From Vitrella brassicaformis CCMP3155 (taxonomy: Eukaryota > Protista > Chromerida), in the NCBI GenBank assembly GCA_001179505.1, contig CDMY01000414.1:1-64000 (forward strand): 64,000 nucleotides of DNA, written 5' to 3'. Below are positions 11,425-64,000 of this stretch, piece by piece; the stretch's first letter is position 1; each line of letters starts with the position of its first letter. A program made the translations under genes and the position numbers. The notes under the pieces were generated by a model. That model ran no database searches and had not been told where the DNA came from. It worked only from the letters and a program-made list of their open reading frames with translations.

Positions 11425-12397
11425 TCTGACCGGCATGAGCGTGGCGCCTTACCGTACCACCGAAGAGGAGGACCCGTATGCCGACGTGGACGTGGACTAC
11501 ATCTACACCTTCAACCCCGAGGACGTCAACACCGACTGGGAGGGATACTACATCGACTACCAGGGGTCAGTCAGGGAGGGAGGGAAGGAGGGACCTAGGC
11601 ATGTGGGTCGGGCCGGGGCTTGGCGCATGTCTGGCGTGCGGTGGATGGAGATCTGTGGTGTGTGGATGTGTGTGCGTGTGTGTGTGTGTGCAGGTTGCAG
11701 AAGCAGCTGCGTGCGATGATGCACGAGCTGGTGACGAGCGAGGCGGCCGGCAAGAAGAGGCTTGAGGAGTTCTGCCACAACCTGGGTGGGCAGGCAGGCA
11801 GACTCACTCACTCACAGGACGCAAACGCGCACACGAATGGAATGGCGGGGTGGGCCATGTTTGTCATGTTTGTCTGTCCAACCAGACCGAGAGATCGACA
11901 AATGCGTCTGTTTCTACGGTGAATGGCTGCACACATGGACGGGTGGATGAATGGATGTTAATATGTGTGTGTGTGTGTGTGTGTGTGTCAGAGATGGAGC
12001 TCACGTCGATGACGAGCCGCCTGAACAACCTCCGCGAGTACTGGAAGTTCCTCAGCCCCAAAATATACTCCAGCCTCTGTATGGGTGTACCCCTCNNNNN
12101 NNNNNNNNNNNNNNNNNNNNNNNNNNNNNNNNNNNNNNNNNNNNNNNNNNNNNNNNNNNNNNNNNNNNNNNNNNNNNNNNNNNNNNNNNNNNNNNNNNNN
12201 NNNNNNNNNNNNNNNNNNNNNNNNNNNNNNNNNNNNNNNNNNNNNNNNNNNNNNNNNNNNNNNNNNNNNNNNNNNNNNNNNNNNNNNNNNNNNNNNNNNN
12301 NNNNNNNNNNNNNNNNNNNNNNNNNNNNNNNNNNNNNNNNNNNNNNNNNNNNNNNNNNNNNNNNNNNNNNNNNNNNNNNNNNNNNNNNNNNNNNNCA

Positions 12398-59041: not shown

Positions 59042-59341
59042 NNNNNNNNNNNNNNNNNNNNNNNNNNNNNNNNNNNNNNNNNNNNNNNNNNNNNNNNNNN
59101 NNNNNNNNNNNNNNNNNNNNNNNNNNNNNNNNNNNNNNNNNNNNNNNNNNNNNNNNNNNNNNNNNNNNNNNNNNNNNNNNNNNNNNNNNNNNNNNNNNNN
59201 NNNNNNNNNNNNNNNNNNNNNNNNNNNNNNNNNNNNNNNNNNNNNNNNNNNNNNNNNNNNNNNNNNNNNNNNNNNNNNNNNNNNNNNNNNNNNNNNNNNN
59301 NNNNNNNNNNNNNNNNNNNNNNNNNNNNNNNNNNNNNNNNN
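59042..59341. other. Assembly gap (300 N) flanked by poly-C runs
   Basis: Run of N between C homopolymers. Confidence 1.
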
Positions 59342-59372
<31 letters not shown>

Positions 59373-60027
59373 CCCGGCCCCCCATCACTGATGCTATAGT
59401 GGGCAGTGCCCGGCACAACACGTCTGTCATGCAGAGCCATACATACGCCATTGAGAGAGACACATGCGATTCGTCCATCCAAGAAAGAGGTGGAGAGGAC
59501 CCACCGGCCGACAAACACACTGGGTGAGAGAGAGAGAGAGAGAGAGGTGAGCGGCAGGCTTTCAATCAAAGCCTGCCGCCGTGGCTCGTCCAACCAACGA
59601 AACGGCCTACCGCCTGCCTAAACGAGATGGTTTCTATGAGAGCCAGCTCTTCGCAGCTAGCAATGCTGTGCGGCCATCCCATAGCCATCATGAAGGAGTC
59701 AATCGGTGCGATCAATAACAAACAGGGCCATACCAGCCAACAAAGGCAATCACAAAACCTCCCCATGTCCGATGGATCGATGGATGGATGGATGCATGAA
59801 TTCATCCACCCCCCCACGCAGAGAGAGACCCACTGATCTTGAGAGGAGTCCCTCACGCGCCTTCTCGCCCTCCCCCTTCCCCTCCCTCCCCCCGCCCAGC
59901 CCGAATGAACAAACACAAACACAGTAGGTGGGAGTACGAATTACAAACACACCATGAGCACATCAGTCGGGAAAACGATACACACATACACGCACAAAGC
60001 AGCGAGCAATCGCCCACATGCCGACAC

Positions 60028-63000
60028 CTAGTTCCCGCTGCCATCGTCATCGGCAGAGCTGTCGTCCTCGTCTATCTCCAGCACGTCGGTGTCCTCCTCC
60101 TCCTCCTCCTCCCCTCCACCACCACCCGGCGCATCCGTGGCCGCCTCGGTATCCGCGTCTATGTCTTGGCCGTAGAAGGACGCCTCTGGCGGCGGGTACA
60201 CCAGGGGGGCGCCCTCGACCTCCTCAAGTGTGCTGCTCGCCGTCGCTGCTGGCTGAACCTCACCACCTGATCAGATCAACCATCACACAACCAGCCGTGA
60301 CGCGTGTGTGGGTGGATGGTGCAGGTCCGCTACCCACCTTGCGAGCCTCTAAAGCGTGGTTGCTGTCCGACGGTGTGTTCCGGCAGGCTGACATTGGACC
60401 CTGGCGCGACGAAGGTCGCCGCGGCGTCCTGGTAGTAGCACCAGGGGACGCCAGCGTTGGCTGATGGTGCGTAGCAGCACTGCCTGTCCAGACACTGCTG
60501 GGCAGTGATGCCGTAGTACCCACAGTCGCGCCGCACATCCAGCTCGTCCGCCGCGGCACACGCACTGGCCTCTCCTGATGCTGATGTGTCGTTCCCCACT
60601 GCCGTGCCTGAACACACACCCACACACACAAGTGTGGCCATCCGTCGGTGCACTCTCTCTTTCTCTCTCTCTCTCTAGCAGCTCACTTTGTGCCCGTGGT
60701 GGGCCGCCCCCCGCCTGTGCGGTGGCGTTGACCTGCTGCGCCACCACCTGGTAACACCGCTTCGGGCCGGACACGGCCGGCTGTCCGTCGGCAGGGGACC
60801 TCCTGCCGACATCAGTGGCCTTGAGCAGACAGCTGGGGTTGCTCGTGTCCACCCTGTTGGGCCTGAAGGTGAAGAACTGGCACTGCGGGTCGTCCCTGCA
60901 GGCCGCCTGGCAGGCGGCCGAGGTGTCGACTGCGAGGGCTTTGATGTCGGGCCCTGTAAAGACGATGCCAGCCTCGTAGCACTTGTCGCCGGCCCAGTAG
61001 ACCATCACGATCTCGCCGGTCATGTCGGAGGAGACATACATGTGGCCCTGACAACACGCCACGCCACACCACGCACTTGTCATGTTTGTGTGGGTGTCTG
61101 GGTGGTGGGTGGCTTGGTGTCTGTGGGCGCTTAGCTTACCCTGTGGTCGAAGGCCACCGAAACGGGCCGCAGGTCAGTCGACCACAGACGATTGATGCCT
61201 ATGCGACACCAAGGACAACAAACTGTTTACACACGCCGTCACACCTCTCTCTCTCTAAGAAGAGACGGGCGTACGCTACCGAGGTGTGTGAGGACTTTCT
61301 GCTGGTCGCCGTCGAGCCGCATGTCTTGGCTGACAGGCACCCGCACCACCTCATACCCCACAGGCACCTCCCTGTTCCACGACCCATGCAGCGCCACAAA
61401 CAGGTCCCCCCGCCACGCACACGGCAGTGCGGTGGTGTCCTGCCGGCCGTCTTGGCGACATGGCGCGTCAGGGTAGTCGACGCCGTAGAATGCGATGCCG
61501 AGAGGGGAGGTGTGCGCCGACATGAGGGTGAAGGGCTTGATGACGTTGGTGGCGTTGTTGCACCACTCGTCTGTGTAGTTGGTGAAGCCCGGCCACACCC
61601 TGACAGTTATACACAGCCACACCATACCATCAGCACACCCAAAAACAAGAAGGAAGGGATGGCGACTGACTGACGGGCAGACCAGACCATTGTGTTCTGG
61701 CGCCCCTGGCGAGGTTGTCCGGGAGGGCGTACTCGCTCCAGCAATACGGATAGCCGTAGAACCTGACACACATCACACCACACACGATGCATTTCTTGTC
61801 GGCATTCGTGTATGTGTTCTGTGTCTGTCTGTTTGTTTTTCTGACCTGCCGGCATTCTTCCACTGGAAGCGGTTGATCTCGTCACCAGGGTTGTCTGTGA
61901 GCCAACGAAGGAAGCCGACATGCAGCTGTGTGCGGTTGTGTGACTTTGTGTCCGCCCTACTCTTGTGCACGTCGCCTCCAAGGTCAGCTCTGACCACACA
62001 CACGGACACACGCATGCATCTGTTATCGCGCAATGGCTGTGGTATGGTAGCAGGGCTAACCTCTTCAGCTCGTCCGCGCCGGTGTCGCCGCCCCACAACA
62101 TGCCTGTCAGGGAAGCATAGCATGCACACCCACCACGGATCCATCAGAGCCGCAGGGATGCATCTGTCTGTCTGTGTGCCTTCCTTCGTGTGTGTGTGTG
62201 TGTGGCTGGCTGGCTGACTGGTTTCCTACCGTCAGGTCCCCACGCCAGCCCCACCGTGTTGCGAACACCATCCTGAACGGACACACAGATACACACAATG
62301 GATTGGTCAGACTTTGCTGCATTTGCTGTAACCAAGCTTGCTTACCGCGAAGACTTCTCCCTTGGCGAAGTCTCTTGGGCCCCCGATGAGGGCATCCGTC
62401 ATGCCCGGAAACCTGAGTGACATACACGGTGAGGGTATGGAGATGGAGGGATGCCCAGGCTGTCTTTCCCTTTGCCCTCACCTCCTGATTCGGGCCCTGA
62501 AAGACGTCCGATCGACGTTGCCCATCGAGCCGATCGAAACATATAGCGTGCCATCCTCAGACAATATCAGAGACCTATGGATACGCAGCACCCCACCGAC
62601 CACAATGCGCAACAAGTGAGATGGAATCCCTCAAGCCCTGCCGACCTCTCTCTCTCACCGTGTCCAGTGCCCCCTGTTTGCGCCGCCCCTGCCGTCGGCA
62701 TTCATGTTGACGACCACCCTCTGCTGCGTCGTCAGGTCGATCGGCGTCCGCTGCTTGGGCTCGTACTTGTACCGAAACACGGTCGTGTCGGAGGAGACGA
62801 AGATGAAGCCGTGCTTGACGGCCAGGCCGTGCGTCAGCGGCACCTTGACGTTCAGCAGCATCGCCTGCTCTGTGTCGGGGTCGCTGAACTGCACCAGAAC
62901 ACAACACAACACATCACATTCTATGCATTGCATGCCTTTCCCCCTTTTCCTGGTTGACTCCCTCACCCCATCTCCATTATCGTCCCAGAGTGCGATGACT

Positions 63001-63304
63001 CGCGCAGAGTTCATCGAGATGCGATCAAGGACCAGCAGGTCGTTGCCCGTATCGGGACTCAACACTAGCTGACGAGGCTTCCTGCAACCACGCAGTCACA
63101 CACACACACAGAGGGGAAAACAGTGTGGGCCCTCCCTTTCTGTGCCCTTATCAGGCGTACTGACCCAAGGTTGCCAGTGAATCTGCAGGCGGCCACGCCA
63201 TCCGGCGTGTCGGCTCGTGGGTAGGGCGGGCAGGGCAGCACAGCACTCACACATGCGATGCAGATCAGCAGACAGAGAGAAGCGAGAAGGGCCTGGCGCG
63301 CCAT
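60028..63304 (-). CDS. Secreted PQQ-dependent sugar dehydrogenase-like beta-propeller (AA12 / L-sorbosone dehydrogenase family) fused to PAN/apple and trefoil (P-type) domains with an acidic tail; about 12 exons
   Basis: Signal MARQALLASLCLLICIACVSA. Propeller motifs in order: NLGKPRQL, LTHGLAV, GHWTR, LYVSIGSMGNVD, GVRNTVGLAW, DNPGDEIN, YGYPYCW, AHTSPLGIAFY, GDLFVALHGSWNREVPVGYEVVRVP, LRPVSVAFD and MYVSSDMTGEI. PAN domain CYEAG...CQAACRDDPQCQFFTF...CLLK...VSGPKRC. Trefoil CAAA...RRDCGYYGITAQQCLDRQCCY...VPWCYY. Confidence 0.88.
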
Positions 63305-64000
63305 TGGGGGGGAAAATTGAGGGCGCTCACCGCGGCCTGCAGCAGCACAAACAGAGCATACACAGGCGCATCTATCTGTGTGTGATTGTATTGGCATTGA
63401 GAAGCGAGATCTTTCCCTCTCACCTTAGCTAGCCAGATCGGTGAGATCTGCGGATAGATAGCGTTGAATGTGATCCTTGAAGCTGCGTTGAGATAAGCCC
63501 GCGGCCACCCTCTCTTCGTCTTCGCTTGCGCGATCCTCTCAGCCCGACCGAAATAATAGTACCCTGGTGGTTTCGGTGGGTCGGGGAGAGAGGGATGGAT
63601 GGATGGATGTGTGGATTGGCTGTACAAGGGTTGACGCATACATGCAGGCAGGCCGGATCATGATTGTCATATATACAGCAGACACCAGCTATTGTCACGA
63701 CCACATGCACATCAGTCGACCACACACACCGTTTTGCTACACACCCGGCTCGTGCCTCATGGCGGCCCGCCGTCACCGTATCAGCTGCAGACAGGAAGCA
63801 GTGACAACACCCAGTGGACGGCGGGTAGAGAGCGGTGATAGTGCCTTAACATCTCACCTGTGTGTCTGCAGTGTTGATAGGGTTCATATGATCGACTCAG
63901 TCGCTCCCCCCCTGGACACGCAGGCATGTGCGATGGCATCAGCATGCAGCCATGAGTGTTCCTTCCCCGTGCCCTCCCCGCCCTCACCTCTGTGATGTGC

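What the first reader, a model, noticed from the sequence alone, without database searches (positions are those of the whole stretch)
60028..63304. Secreted PQQ-type sugar dehydrogenase fused to PAN/apple and trefoil modules in an alveolate
Seen: spliced exons assemble a signal peptide, the full ordered motif set of the sorbosone/aldose-sugar dehydrogenase propeller (GHxTR, RNxVG, NPxDEIN, YGYP, AHxxPLG, HGSWNR, RP), then a PAN domain, a trefoil domain and an acidic tail with no TM helix. Established: this propeller family binds PQQ, fungal AA12 pyranose dehydrogenases are the characterised eukaryotic members, and PQQ biosynthesis is known from bacteria. PAN/apple domains are adhesive modules in apicomplexan microneme proteins (e.g. 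MIC4), and trefoil domains associate with mucins and glycans. Inference: this is a glycan-anchored extracellular oxidoreductase that would depend on PQQ scavenged from associated bacteria. The AHxxPLGIAFY / GDLFVALHGSWNR.PVGY wording looks bacterial-type, raising possible HGT followed by intron gain and fusion to alveolate adhesion modules. I do not know this domain combination from any described protein.
Basis: partly seen in the sequence, partly recalled or inferred. Interest (0 to 1): 0.85.

Follow-up and report, generated by a model that had tools for sequence, protein, structure and literature searches.

The report
Secreted quinoprotein enzyme with sugar-grip modules
A single expressed gene of the alga Vitrella brassicaformis encodes a secreted sugar-oxidising enzyme of the fungal AA12 type, which needs the bacterial cofactor PQQ, joined to two animal-style binding modules (PAN/apple and trefoil); the join is real and I found it in no other protein, but the enzyme family is old and widespread in algae and was not recently taken from bacteria.

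Summary
On the minus strand, 15 GT-AG coding exons (63304..60028) give a 710-aa ORF. It is identical to the public protein CEM11358.1 / A0A0G4FDV3 of Vitrella brassicaformis CCMP3155.

Transcript contigs from several runs join every predicted intron. They carry propeller, PAN, trefoil and acidic tail on one mRNA.

Pfam scores:
- TrAA12-like: 107.9 bits
- PAN: 38 and 34 bits
- Trefoil: 49.5 bits

The modelled propeller (pLDDT above 90) matches fungal TrAA12 (TM 0.84) and CcPDH (TM 0.80). It keeps all nine PQQ-binding residues of CcPDH and the Ca-binding Asp. Two water-mediated metal-shell positions are atypical (T237, D258). The trefoil keeps its six Cys and the TFF lectin dyad (D569, W597), and it occupies its own symmetric phase 1-1 exon.

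The horizontal-transfer idea is not supported:
- The gene is sister to an intron-sharing Vitrella paralogue (six shared intron positions).
- It sits inside an algal and protist clade, separate from the labelled bacterial clade.

None of about 270 nearest homologues carries PAN or trefoil. Relatives instead carry DOMON, Hint or a hydrophobic tail.

Verdict: a new architectural variant of a known enzyme family. PQQ dependence and glycan tethering are well-founded inferences but untested. This stretch was noted by the scan before under two ids; earlier unchecked notes report similar fusions elsewhere in this genome.

The parts
59402..63540 (-). Whole transcript as seen in assembled RNA contigs: 5'UTR exon, 15 coding exons, and a 3'UTR of about 626 nt
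   Evidence: blastn of transcript contigs L002 and L003 against the window gives 16 collinear blocks at 100% identity (one overextended block edge aside); joints
63337..63423 (-). Intron in the 5'UTR (about 87 nt; the boundary is ambiguous by 2 nt)
   Evidence: Transcript contigs jump from 63423/63424 to 63338; loose end at 63338
60028..63304 (-). Coding region of 15 exons: 63304-63165, 63081-62967, 62888-62659, 62574-62482, 62412-62346, 62272-62230, 62103-62061, 61989-61961, 61894-61846, 61762-61688, 61599-61280, 61198-61140, 61047-60687, 60607-60338, 60266-60028
   Evidence: All introns GT..AG, 66-126 nt; product identical to P0001; joints seen in RNA contigs
63242..63304 (-). Signal peptide, about aa 1-21 (MARQALLASLCLLICIACVSA)
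   Evidence: It is the only strongly hydrophobic window of the protein. Homology to the mature N-terminus of TrAA12 starts at aa 26-28, leaving no room for a plastid transit peptide. The cleavage site is inferred, not predicted with a tool.
60982..63229 (-). AA12-type six-bladed beta-propeller, aa 26-443, spread over exons 1-13
   Evidence: Pfam TrAA12 at 107.9 bits, aa 46-443; AF2 pLDDT above 90 over aa 30-440; Foldseek 6H7T TMt 0.84 and 6JT5 TMt 0.80
62667..62669 (-). His159 (GHWTR), equivalent to the catalytic base His363 of CcPDH, His153 of TrAA12 and His144 of sGDH
   Evidence: Alignments; invariant in 116/116 homologues; roles from PMC6881789 and PMC6881810
62258..62263 (-). Arg219-Asn220, equivalent to Arg430/Asn431 of CcPDH, which hold the reactive O5/O4 carbonyls of PQQ
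   Evidence: alignment; 116/116 conserved
62072..62083 (-). Metal loop T237-G238-A239-D240, equivalent to CcPDH N448-S449-L450-D451. D240 is the direct Ca ligand. T237 replaces an Asn present in 112/116 homologues.
   Evidence: PMC6881789
61881..61883 (-). Asp258, equivalent to the water-mediated Ca ligand Glu471 of CcPDH. It is the only Asp among 116 homologues; the other 115 have Glu.
61374..61388 (-). H366-G-S-W369-N370, equivalent to CcPDH His560, Trp563 and Asn564, which bind the C9 and C7 carboxylates of PQQ
   Evidence: ALHGSWNR identical in both proteins
61167..61169 (-). Arg412 (RPV), equivalent to CcPDH Arg621, the ion pair with the C9 carboxylate
   Evidence: The profile alignment puts the family RPV on chain R382, which is Arg621; conserved in 115/116
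60754..60981 (-). PAN/apple domain, aa 444-519, with six Cys (444, 467, 471, 477, 494, 519). It lies in the same exon as the last propeller blade.
   Evidence: Pfam PAN_4 38.2 and PAN_1 34.1 bits; PDB sequence hits to factor XI and prekallikrein apple domains, Eimeria MIC5 and Toxoplasma MIC4
60338..60607 (-). Exon 14: 270 nt flanked by phase-1 introns on both sides (a symmetric 1-1 exon). It holds a Ser/Ala-rich linker and the whole trefoil domain.
   Evidence: Phases; joints
60438..60560 (-). Trefoil (P-type) domain, aa 558-598, with six Cys (558, 570, 580, 585, 586, 598). Asp569 and Trp597 sit at the two sugar-contacting positions of TFF1/TFF3.
   Evidence: Pfam Trefoil 49.5 bits; alignments to pSP/TFF2, TFF1 and TFF3; ligand residues from PMC7221086
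60031..60264 (-). Acidic C-terminal tail, modelled with low confidence and probably disordered (exon 15; 14 Glu and 12 Asp among the last 80 residues). It has no hydrophobic end.
   Evidence: pLDDT below 50

Best explanation
This is one nuclear gene of the chromerid alga Vitrella brassicaformis (Alveolata). It makes a secreted, modular, AA12-type quinoprotein.

Shown:
- The spliced mRNA and its 710-aa product.
- The domain order: signal peptide, six-bladed AA12 propeller, PAN/apple, glycosylatable linker, trefoil, acidic tail.
- Retention of every residue that binds PQQ, and of the direct Ca ligand, in the solved fungal enzyme CcPDH.
- Long residence of the gene in the algal lineage.

Inferred mechanism:
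- The apo-protein enters the secretory pathway and is released, because it has no anchor.
- Outside the cell it loads PQQ made by bacteria, since no eukaryotic PQQ synthesis is known, together with a divalent metal.
- His159 abstracts a proton while hydride passes from a pyranose or aldose carbon to C5 of PQQ, which is polarised by Arg219, Asn220 and the metal, as in sGDH and CcPDH.
- The electron acceptor is unknown, because no cytochrome domain is attached.
- PAN and trefoil act like the CBM1 of CcPDH. They hold the enzyme on glycans or glycoproteins of the alga's own wall or mucilage, or of a partner surface. The trefoil keeps the Asp/Trp pair that grips the sugar in human TFFs.

Origin of the fusion: the trefoil probably came in as a shuffled phase 1-1 exon. 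The propeller arose by duplication within the chromerid lineage.
For: Gene and mRNA:
-.

Family:
- Pfam TrAA12 scores 107.9 bits.
- PDB sequence hits are TrAA12 at 2e-33 and CcPDH at 1.4e-19.
- The family profile scores 245 and 227 bits against these two, but only 46 bits against the best bacterial Asd-type chain.
- The AF2 propeller model has pLDDT above 90. Foldseek gives TMt 0.84 and 0.80 at 30% and 26% identity, against 14-17% identity for sGDH and Asd.

Active site:
- R50, H159, R219, N220, H324, H366, W369, N370 and R412 match CcPDH R273, H363, R430, N431, H539, H560, W563, N564 and R621. D240 matches D451.
- The roles of these residues come from PMC6881789. The same nine residues are used as a PQQ signature in preprint 10.64898/2026.07.10.737718.

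Binding modules:
- PAN and Trefoil score above their Pfam cut-offs with full Cys sets.
- The TFF lectin dyad is kept (PMC7221086).

Precedents:
- CcPDH carries a C-terminal CBM1 and binds PQQ with a Kd of 1.11 nM (PMC4332668).
- A cluster of oomycete glucan 1,3-beta-glucosidases carries PAN plus GH5 domains.

Origin:
-.
Against: - No activity, cofactor or ligand has been measured for any algal member of this family.
- Two water-mediated metal-shell residues deviate from the family: T237 where 112/116 have Asn, and D258 where 115/116 have Glu. The metal site could therefore be altered.
- The PAN and trefoil folds could not be modelled with confidence (pLDDT below 50; 43.5 overall). Their ligands are unknown, and PAN domains bind proteins as often as sugars.
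- No electron-accepting domain or neighbouring partner gene was found; the neighbours are unrelated housekeeping genes.
- The absence of PQQ synthesis genes in Vitrella was not checked genome-wide.
- The signal peptide was judged by eye and hydropathy only.
Confidence: 0.65

Rival explanations
1. The propeller is a non-catalytic binding scaffold, like the same fold in the vertebrate Hedgehog-interacting protein. On this reading the whole protein is an adhesin or matrix protein built from three binding modules.
For: - HHIP propellers appear among the fold matches at TMt 0.42-0.51.
- The partner modules are adhesive types: PAN in MIC4 and MIC5, trefoil in the TFFs.
- Two metal-shell positions are atypical for the family.
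- Some relatives carry a Hint module, which is a Hedgehog-type context.
Against: - All nine PQQ-binding residues, the catalytic His and the direct Ca ligand are intact, and they are invariant or nearly so across 116 homologues. This argues for selection on the cofactor site.
- The match to the catalytic AA12 enzymes is far better than to HHIP (30% against 13% identity).
Confidence: 0.13
2. The propeller gene was recently acquired from bacteria, then gained introns and was fused to alveolate adhesion modules.
For: Labelled bacterial sequences (five from Myxococcota or 'Deltaproteobacteria', one Polyangiales and one Pseudomonadota MAG) reach 41-43% identity, similar to many eukaryotic hits. The deep relation between the bacterial and eukaryotic clades, and therefore an ancient transfer in either direction, is not resolved because the root is unknown.
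Against: - Its sister is a Vitrella paralogue (support 98/94) that shares six intron positions with identical phases.
- All 12 labelled eukaryotes and all 7 labelled bacteria fall on opposite sides of one branch (99/96) in 100% of bootstrap trees.
- Classical bacterial sGDH and Asd are only 14-17% identical.
Confidence: 0.03
3. The PAN, trefoil and tail exons belong to a separate downstream gene and were merged by gene prediction.
For: None was found. The only general ground is that the 3' modules have no homologue among the propeller relatives.
Against: Single assembled transcript contigs run from the 5'UTR through all 15 coding exons into the 3'UTR. This holds in three data sets. PAN also shares exon 13 with the last propeller blade.
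Confidence: 0.01
4. The enzyme is a quinoprotein, but its altered metal shell (T-G-A-D-D instead of the family's N-G-A-D-E) suits a metal other than Ca, such as a lanthanide or another divalent ion.
For: A 2026 preprint reports that about 80% of the bacterial AA12-type homologues in its set have N-E-R-D-D at these five positions and are predicted to bind lanthanides; it confirmed La binding biochemically for two of them. Asp stands at the position of CcPDH Glu471 there (10.64898/2026.07.10.737718). The Vitrella protein has Asp there too, uniquely among 116 relatives.
Against: It lacks the Glu and Arg of that motif and has lost the Asn. Both changes are conservative O-donors acting through water in CcPDH (PMC6881789). 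The preprint's rule is new and is not validated for eukaryotes.
Confidence: 0.08

Closest known systems
CcPDH, the PQQ-dependent pyranose dehydrogenase of Coprinopsis cinerea (CAZy AA12; PDB 6JT5/6JWF)
   Same: - Secreted eukaryotic six-bladed propeller.
- All nine PQQ-binding residues and the Ca-binding Asp are the same, including the AA12-specific HGSWN loop.
- The catalytic domain is followed by a C-terminal binding module (CBM1 in CcPDH; PMC4332668).
- Foldseek TMt 0.80.
   Different: - Only 26% identity.
- There is no N-terminal AA8 cytochrome b domain, so the electron outlet is unknown.
- The binding modules are PAN plus trefoil instead of CBM1.
- There is an acidic tail.
- The water-mediated metal ligands are T and D instead of N and E.
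TrAA12 of Trichoderma reesei (PDB 6H7T, 6I1Q, 6I1T)
   Same: It is the best solved match (E 2e-33, 30% identity, TMt 0.84). It is a single catalytic propeller without a cytochrome, and it shares the same catalytic His, the Arg of the Arg/Asx dyad (Asn220 here, Asp221 in TrAA12) and the Ca-binding Asp.
   Different: TrAA12 has Thr where this protein and CcPDH have the C-terminal Arg (R412/R621). It also has T-D where they have W-N. TrAA12 carries no appended modules.
Algal and protist AA12-like proteins (Pfam PF22807), such as Vitrella paralogue CEL99108.1 and homologues in Pleurochrysis, Chloropicon, Thalassiosira, Nitzschia and Amoebophrya
   Same: They share the same clade, 36-48% identity and the same invariant residues. 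Six introns are shared with the Vitrella paralogue.
   Different: None of the nearest homologues inspected carries PAN or trefoil: 120 had precomputed Pfam lists and about 25 were scanned here. Where they have extras, these are a DOMON domain, a Hint module, tandem propellers or a hydrophobic C-terminal tail.
Bacterial soluble glucose and aldose dehydrogenases (sGDH 1CQ1, Asd 2G8S; Pfam GSDH PF07995)
   Same: They share the fold class, the PQQ plus Ca chemistry, the catalytic His and the Arg-Asn pair.
   Different: Identity is 14-17% and TMt 0.5-0.68. The Pfam GSDH score of 24.2 is under the cut-off of 25. The carboxylate-binding residues also differ: Lys377 and Arg408 of sGDH against the HGSWN loop and N-terminal Arg here (PMC6881789).
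Trefoil factor peptides (TFF1-3) and the trefoil domains of GH31 alpha-glucosidases
   Same: Six-Cys P-domain with the R-x-[DN]-C-G ... CC ... PWC signature, and the Asp/Asn and Trp that contact GlcNAc-alpha-1,4-Gal (PMC7221086). As in maltase-glucoamylase, the domain is attached to a carbohydrate-active enzyme.
   Different: It occurs in a unicellular alga, C-terminal to an oxidoreductase. The ligand is unknown.
PAN/apple modules of apicomplexan microneme proteins (TgMIC4, EtMIC5) and a cluster of PAN-bearing oomycete glucan 1,3-beta-glucosidases
   Same: Six-Cys apple pattern, with sequence matches to 1HKY and 4A5V. PAN joined to a glycan-active enzyme is seen in an oomycete cluster.
   Different: There is a single PAN copy, with no repeats and no membrane anchor. 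It is fused directly, within one exon, to the last propeller blade.

Membership tests
CAZy AA12 / Pfam PF22807 TrAA12-like PQQ-dependent dehydrogenases | Sequence matches the family model above its curated threshold | tested here: met
   107.9 bits against a cut-off of 30.9, aa 46-443
CAZy AA12 / Pfam PF22807 TrAA12-like PQQ-dependent dehydrogenases | Six-bladed beta-propeller fold superposable on solved AA12 structures | tested here: met
   AF2 pLDDT above 90 for aa 30-440; Foldseek 6H7T TMt 0.84 and 6JT5 TMt 0.80
CAZy AA12 / Pfam PF22807 TrAA12-like PQQ-dependent dehydrogenases | The nine PQQ-binding residues of CcPDH (R273, H363, R430, N431, H539, H560, W563, N564, R621) | tested here: met
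   R50, H159, R219, N220, H324, H366, W369, N370 and R412, mapped by pairwise and profile alignment
CAZy AA12 / Pfam PF22807 TrAA12-like PQQ-dependent dehydrogenases | Catalytic Ca site: backbone carbonyl of S449, side chain of D451, and water-mediated N448, L450 and E471 | tested here: inconclusive
   The direct ligand D240 and the backbone position G238 are kept. The water-mediated positions are T237 and D258, both rare in the family.
CAZy AA12 / Pfam PF22807 TrAA12-like PQQ-dependent dehydrogenases | PQQ- and Ca-dependent oxidation of pyranoses or aldoses | not testable with these tools
   Needs recombinant protein and an assay
Bacterial sGDH / Asd (Pfam GSDH PF07995) | Sequence matches the family model above its curated threshold | tested here: not met
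   24.2 bits against a cut-off of 25; 14-17% identity to solved members
PAN/apple domain (PF00024, PF14295) | HMM match above threshold and a six-Cys pattern | tested here: met
   PAN_4 38.2 bits (cut-off 27) and PAN_1 34.1 bits (cut-off 21.4); Cys 444, 467, 471, 477, 494 and 519
PAN/apple domain (PF00024, PF14295) | Apple fold (helix packed on a curved beta-sheet) | tested here: inconclusive
   AF2 confidence is low in this region. The Atlas model of this region aligns to a PAN cluster at TM 0.77 by the row.
Trefoil / P-type domain (PF00088) | HMM match above threshold, six Cys including the CC pair, and the PWC motif | tested here: met
   49.5 bits against a cut-off of 21; Cys 558, 570, 580, 585, 586 and 598; alignments
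Trefoil / P-type domain (PF00088) | Lectin dyad of the TFFs: Asp/Asn before Cys2 and the Trp of PWC | tested here: met
   D569 and W597 align with TFF1 N14 and its PWC Trp. TFF3 Asp20 and Trp47 are given as the equivalent positions in PMC7221086.
Trefoil / P-type domain (PF00088) | Binding of a defined glycan | not testable with these tools
   Needs a glycan array or ITC

The most novel reading that the evidence does not exclude
Chromerid algae use trefoil and PAN domains as a mobile set of carbohydrate-binding modules, shuffled as symmetric exons onto many secreted carbohydrate-active enzymes. This protein would be one such case. It would also be an algal quinoprotein that works only with PQQ supplied by associated bacteria, which would make PQQ a vitamin-like currency in alga-bacterium partnerships such as the coral holobiont. 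The unusual T237/D258 metal shell could further mark a shift in metal use.
Probability: 0.25. Interest if true: 0.7.

Novelty: new variant of a known kind. Interest (0 to 1): 0.45.

Why it matters
- PQQ-dependent enzymes of eukaryotes have been studied only in fungi. In the paper library I found no study of AA12-type enzymes in microalgae.
- This gene, and the broad algal clade it belongs to, keep a complete PQQ site. Many algae may therefore depend on bacterial PQQ for extracellular sugar oxidation. That idea can be tested directly with this well-defined, expressed protein.
- The appended PAN and trefoil modules, best known from animals, extend the idea that trefoil domains are lectins to a unicellular alga. 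The trefoil's phase 1-1 exon is a clean candidate example of exon shuffling outside animals.
- If the binding modules and substrate were identified, they would show what the alga oxidises at its surface: its own wall or mucilage, or a partner's glycans.

Tried and rejected
1. Pfam on single exons gave only weak TrAA12 hits (17 bits each). This was resolved once the full protein id was recovered.
2. A search for relatives of the PAN-trefoil part (aa 440-640) in the 5.8-billion-protein set returned only the protein itself. The word index and the large database make this blank uninformative about distant kin.
3. A single-sequence AF2 model of aa 436-612 was useless (pLDDT 43.5). The full-length model also left aa 450-710 at low confidence, so no fold-level check of PAN or trefoil was possible.
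4. The Atlas feature search for the C-terminal part gave only generic PAN clusters with scores of 0.80 or less, which are leads only.
5. Literature searches for trefoil or PAN in Vitrella, AA12 in microalgae, and PQQ exchange with phytoplankton found nothing specific. The chromerid genome paper does not mention trefoil, apple, sorbosone or PQQ.
6. A word search of earlier scan notes for PQQ biosynthesis genes in this genome found nothing. This is not evidence of absence.
7. Considered and rejected: plastid targeting, because there is no room for a transit peptide; a GPI or TM anchor, because there is no hydrophobic C-terminus; and a functional gene cluster, because the neighbours are a helicase, ribosomal L1, CNOT11, a TLD protein and a U-box-cyclophilin.


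Full report
**What is there**

The region lies on the minus strand. Reading it, I assembled 15 coding exons from the ATG at 63304 to the TAG at 60030-60028. Every intron is GT..AG and 66-126 nt long, and the 2133-nt CDS has no internal stop.

A search of 1.84 billion representative proteins with exon 11 alone returned a 710-aa protein matching at residues 296-401. That protein is identical to my model over all 710 residues. It is CEM11358.1 / UniRef A0A0G4FDV3, "Apple domain-containing protein", of Vitrella brassicaformis CCMP3155. It is also recorded as a complete MMETSP transcript ORF. The gene sits on contig CDMY01000414.1 at the window's own coordinates. Vitrella is an alveolate (Colpodellida).

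**Transcription and splicing**

Contigs of RNA runs laid on 59900-63420 skip exactly the predicted introns, with CT..AC ends on the + strand. A DNA run covers the region without those joints.

Two independently assembled transcript contigs (Logan SRR646408, 2908 nt; JGI 3300017148, 2397 nt) align to the window in 16 collinear blocks: a 5'UTR exon (63540-63424), the 15 coding exons, and a 3'UTR reaching 59402. Each encodes the full 710 aa.

The PAN domain in fact shares exon 13 with the last propeller blade.

**Domains**

Pfam on the whole protein:

| Family | Score (bits) | Residues |
|---|---|---|
| TrAA12-like PF22807 | 107.9 | 46-443 |
| PAN_4 | 38.2 | 452-497 |
| PAN_1 | 34.1 | 450-506 |
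| Trefoil | 49.5 | 566-600 |
| GSDH | 24.2 (cut-off 25) | 141-277 |

- The PAN segment has six Cys and the trefoil six Cys, including the CC pair.
- The only hydrophobic stretch is the N-terminal leader.
- Similarity to the mature N-terminus of TrAA12 begins at aa 26-28. I therefore infer a plain signal peptide with no plastid transit peptide.
- There is no C-terminal hydrophobic segment.
- The last 80 residues contain 26 Asp/Glu.

**What kind of propeller**

- Against solved structures by sequence, the best matches are fungal TrAA12 (2e-33) and the AA12 domain of CcPDH (1.4e-19).
- A profile of 116 homologues scores 245 and 227 bits on these two, but only 46 bits on the best bacterial Asd-type chain.
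- An AlphaFold2 model built with that alignment has pLDDT above 90 through aa 30-440.
- The model superposes on 6H7T (TMt 0.84, 30% identity) and 6JT5 (TMt 0.80, 26% identity). sGDH and Asd follow at 14-17% identity.

**Active site**

The holo-structure paper of CcPDH names the PQQ ligands Arg273, His363, Arg430, Asn431, His539, His560, Trp563, Asn564 and Arg621. It names the Ca ligands Ser449 (backbone) and Asp451, with Asn448, Leu450 and Glu471 acting through water (PMC6881789). A 2026 preprint uses the same nine residues as a PQQ signature.

I fixed the chain-to-paper offsets from the printed alignments: +239 for 6JT5 and +26 for 6H7T. The Vitrella equivalents are R50, H159, R219, N220, H324, H366, W369, N370 and R412, plus G238 and D240. 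All are invariant or nearly so in 116 homologues.

Two second-shell metal positions are unusual. T237 stands where 112/116 have Asn, and D258 where 115/116 have Glu. These are conservative changes, but the pattern is unique to this protein. I leave their meaning open.

**Origin**

- A quick tree of 116 propellers and a careful tree of 53 (LG+C20, UFBoot/SH-aLRT) both pair the gene with the Vitrella paralogue CEL99108.1 (98/94).
- They place the pair among haptophyte, green-algal, diatom and syndinian sequences, in a clade with 95/82 support when rooted on a fungus and liverwort group.
- The seven labelled bacterial sequences fall in a separate clade (99/93). They are five Myxococcota or "Deltaproteobacteria", one Polyangiales and one Pseudomonadota MAG.
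- Eukaryote and bacterium labels need one change each in 100% of bootstrap trees. Only 19 rows carry taxon labels, which limits this test.
- I mapped the paralogue's exons on its contig. Six intron positions coincide in alignment column and phase with introns of this gene.

A recent bacterial transfer followed by intron gain is thus not supported. An ancient inter-domain transfer in either direction cannot be judged without a root.

**The appended modules**

- PAN matches factor XI and prekallikrein apple domains and the apicomplexan MIC5 and MIC4 domains.
- The trefoil aligns with both domains of porcine spasmolytic polypeptide, and with TFF1 and TFF3, across all six Cys.
[quoted passage not shown] The aligned residues here are D569 and W597.
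- Exon 14 is 270 nt long and bounded by phase-1 introns on both sides. It contains the linker and the whole trefoil. This is the classic shape of a shuffled module.

**How unusual is the architecture**

- Among the 120 best full-length homologues with precomputed Pfam lists, only this protein has PAN or trefoil.
- Scans of a further 25 or so relatives, including the longest, found none.
- Relatives carry other additions instead: DOMON (P0244), a Hint module (P0118 and five more by precomputed Pfam), tandem propellers (P0003, P0014), or a hydrophobic C-terminal tail seen in the sequences (P0007, P0013).
- The family is therefore modular, and this is one more variant. It is analogous to the AA8-AA12-CBM1 arrangement of CcPDH (PMC4332668).
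- Earlier notes of this scan report other Vitrella AA12 propellers with PAN. They also report trefoil domains on GH13, GH16, arylsulfotransferase and expansin-like proteins. I did not test these.

**Mechanism, with its status**

Shown:
- A secretory-type, anchorless, expressed protein.
- An intact AA12 cofactor pocket.

Inferred from the family:
- The protein takes up exogenous PQQ. Apo-CcPDH binds PQQ at 1.11 nM (PMC4332668), and no eukaryotic PQQ synthesis is known.
- It uses a metal-assisted hydride transfer from a sugar to PQQ C5, with His159 as the base.

Speculative:
- The substrate and the electron acceptor.
- The idea that PAN and trefoil tether the enzyme to glycans.

**Verdict**

The horizontal-transfer part is not supported. 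The protein is already in public databases with automatic domain labels, but I found no description of it, or of algal AA12 enzymes, in the paper library. It is a new variant of a known kind and of moderate interest.

Noticed in passing
window 60338-60607 (-): Exon 14 is a symmetric phase 1-1 exon that carries exactly one trefoil domain plus a linker. This is a textbook exon-shuffling signature, seen here in a unicellular alga.
   Followed up: partly
window 62081-62083 and 61881-61883 (-): T237 and D258 replace the Asn (112/116) and Glu (115/116) that hold the Ca-bound waters in CcPDH. This protein is the only one of 116 relatives with Asp at the second site.
   Followed up: partly
proteins P0118, P0096, P0189, P0222, P0238, P0242 (metagenome and ENA sequences): An AA12-like propeller is followed by a Hint (Hedgehog/intein) module; in P0118 TrAA12 covers aa 29-394 and Hint aa 406-539 (67 bits). 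This is curious because the vertebrate Hedgehog-interacting protein uses the same propeller fold.
   Followed up: partly
protein P0244 (JGI; groups with Thalassiosira sequences): An N-terminal DOMON domain precedes the AA12 propeller. This may be an algal counterpart of the fungal AA8 cytochrome-AA12 arrangement.
   Followed up: partly
proteins P0003 (1120 aa) and P0014 (899 aa): Each has two complete AA12-like propellers in tandem in one polypeptide. P0003 also has a hydrophobic segment near its C-terminus followed by a charged tail.
   Followed up: no
protein P0151 (Orchesella cincta, 926 aa): A springtail genome record annotated as L-sorbosone dehydrogenase is the second-best full-length hit (39% identity over 62% of the query, two TrAA12 stretches). 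It could be an arthropod AA12, a transfer or contamination.
   Followed up: no
window 63337-63423 (-): An 87-nt intron lies in the 5'UTR. The transcript starts at or before 63540.
   Followed up: yes
window 59042-59341: A 300-N assembly gap lies 60 nt beyond the end of the longest transcript contig (59402). Three more 300-N gaps lie at 12096, 17946 and 44155.
   Followed up: no
locus L001 (the same contig, 10 kb on each side of the gene): The neighbours are unrelated housekeeping genes: DEAD_2 helicase, ribosomal L1, CNOT11, a TLD protein and a U-box-cyclophilin. There is no carbohydrate or redox gene cluster.
   Followed up: yes
protein P0002 (3556 aa): A highly repetitive protein scored 3.6e-40 against exon 11 through 59 short stretches. 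I take this as a low-complexity artefact, not a relative.
   Followed up: no
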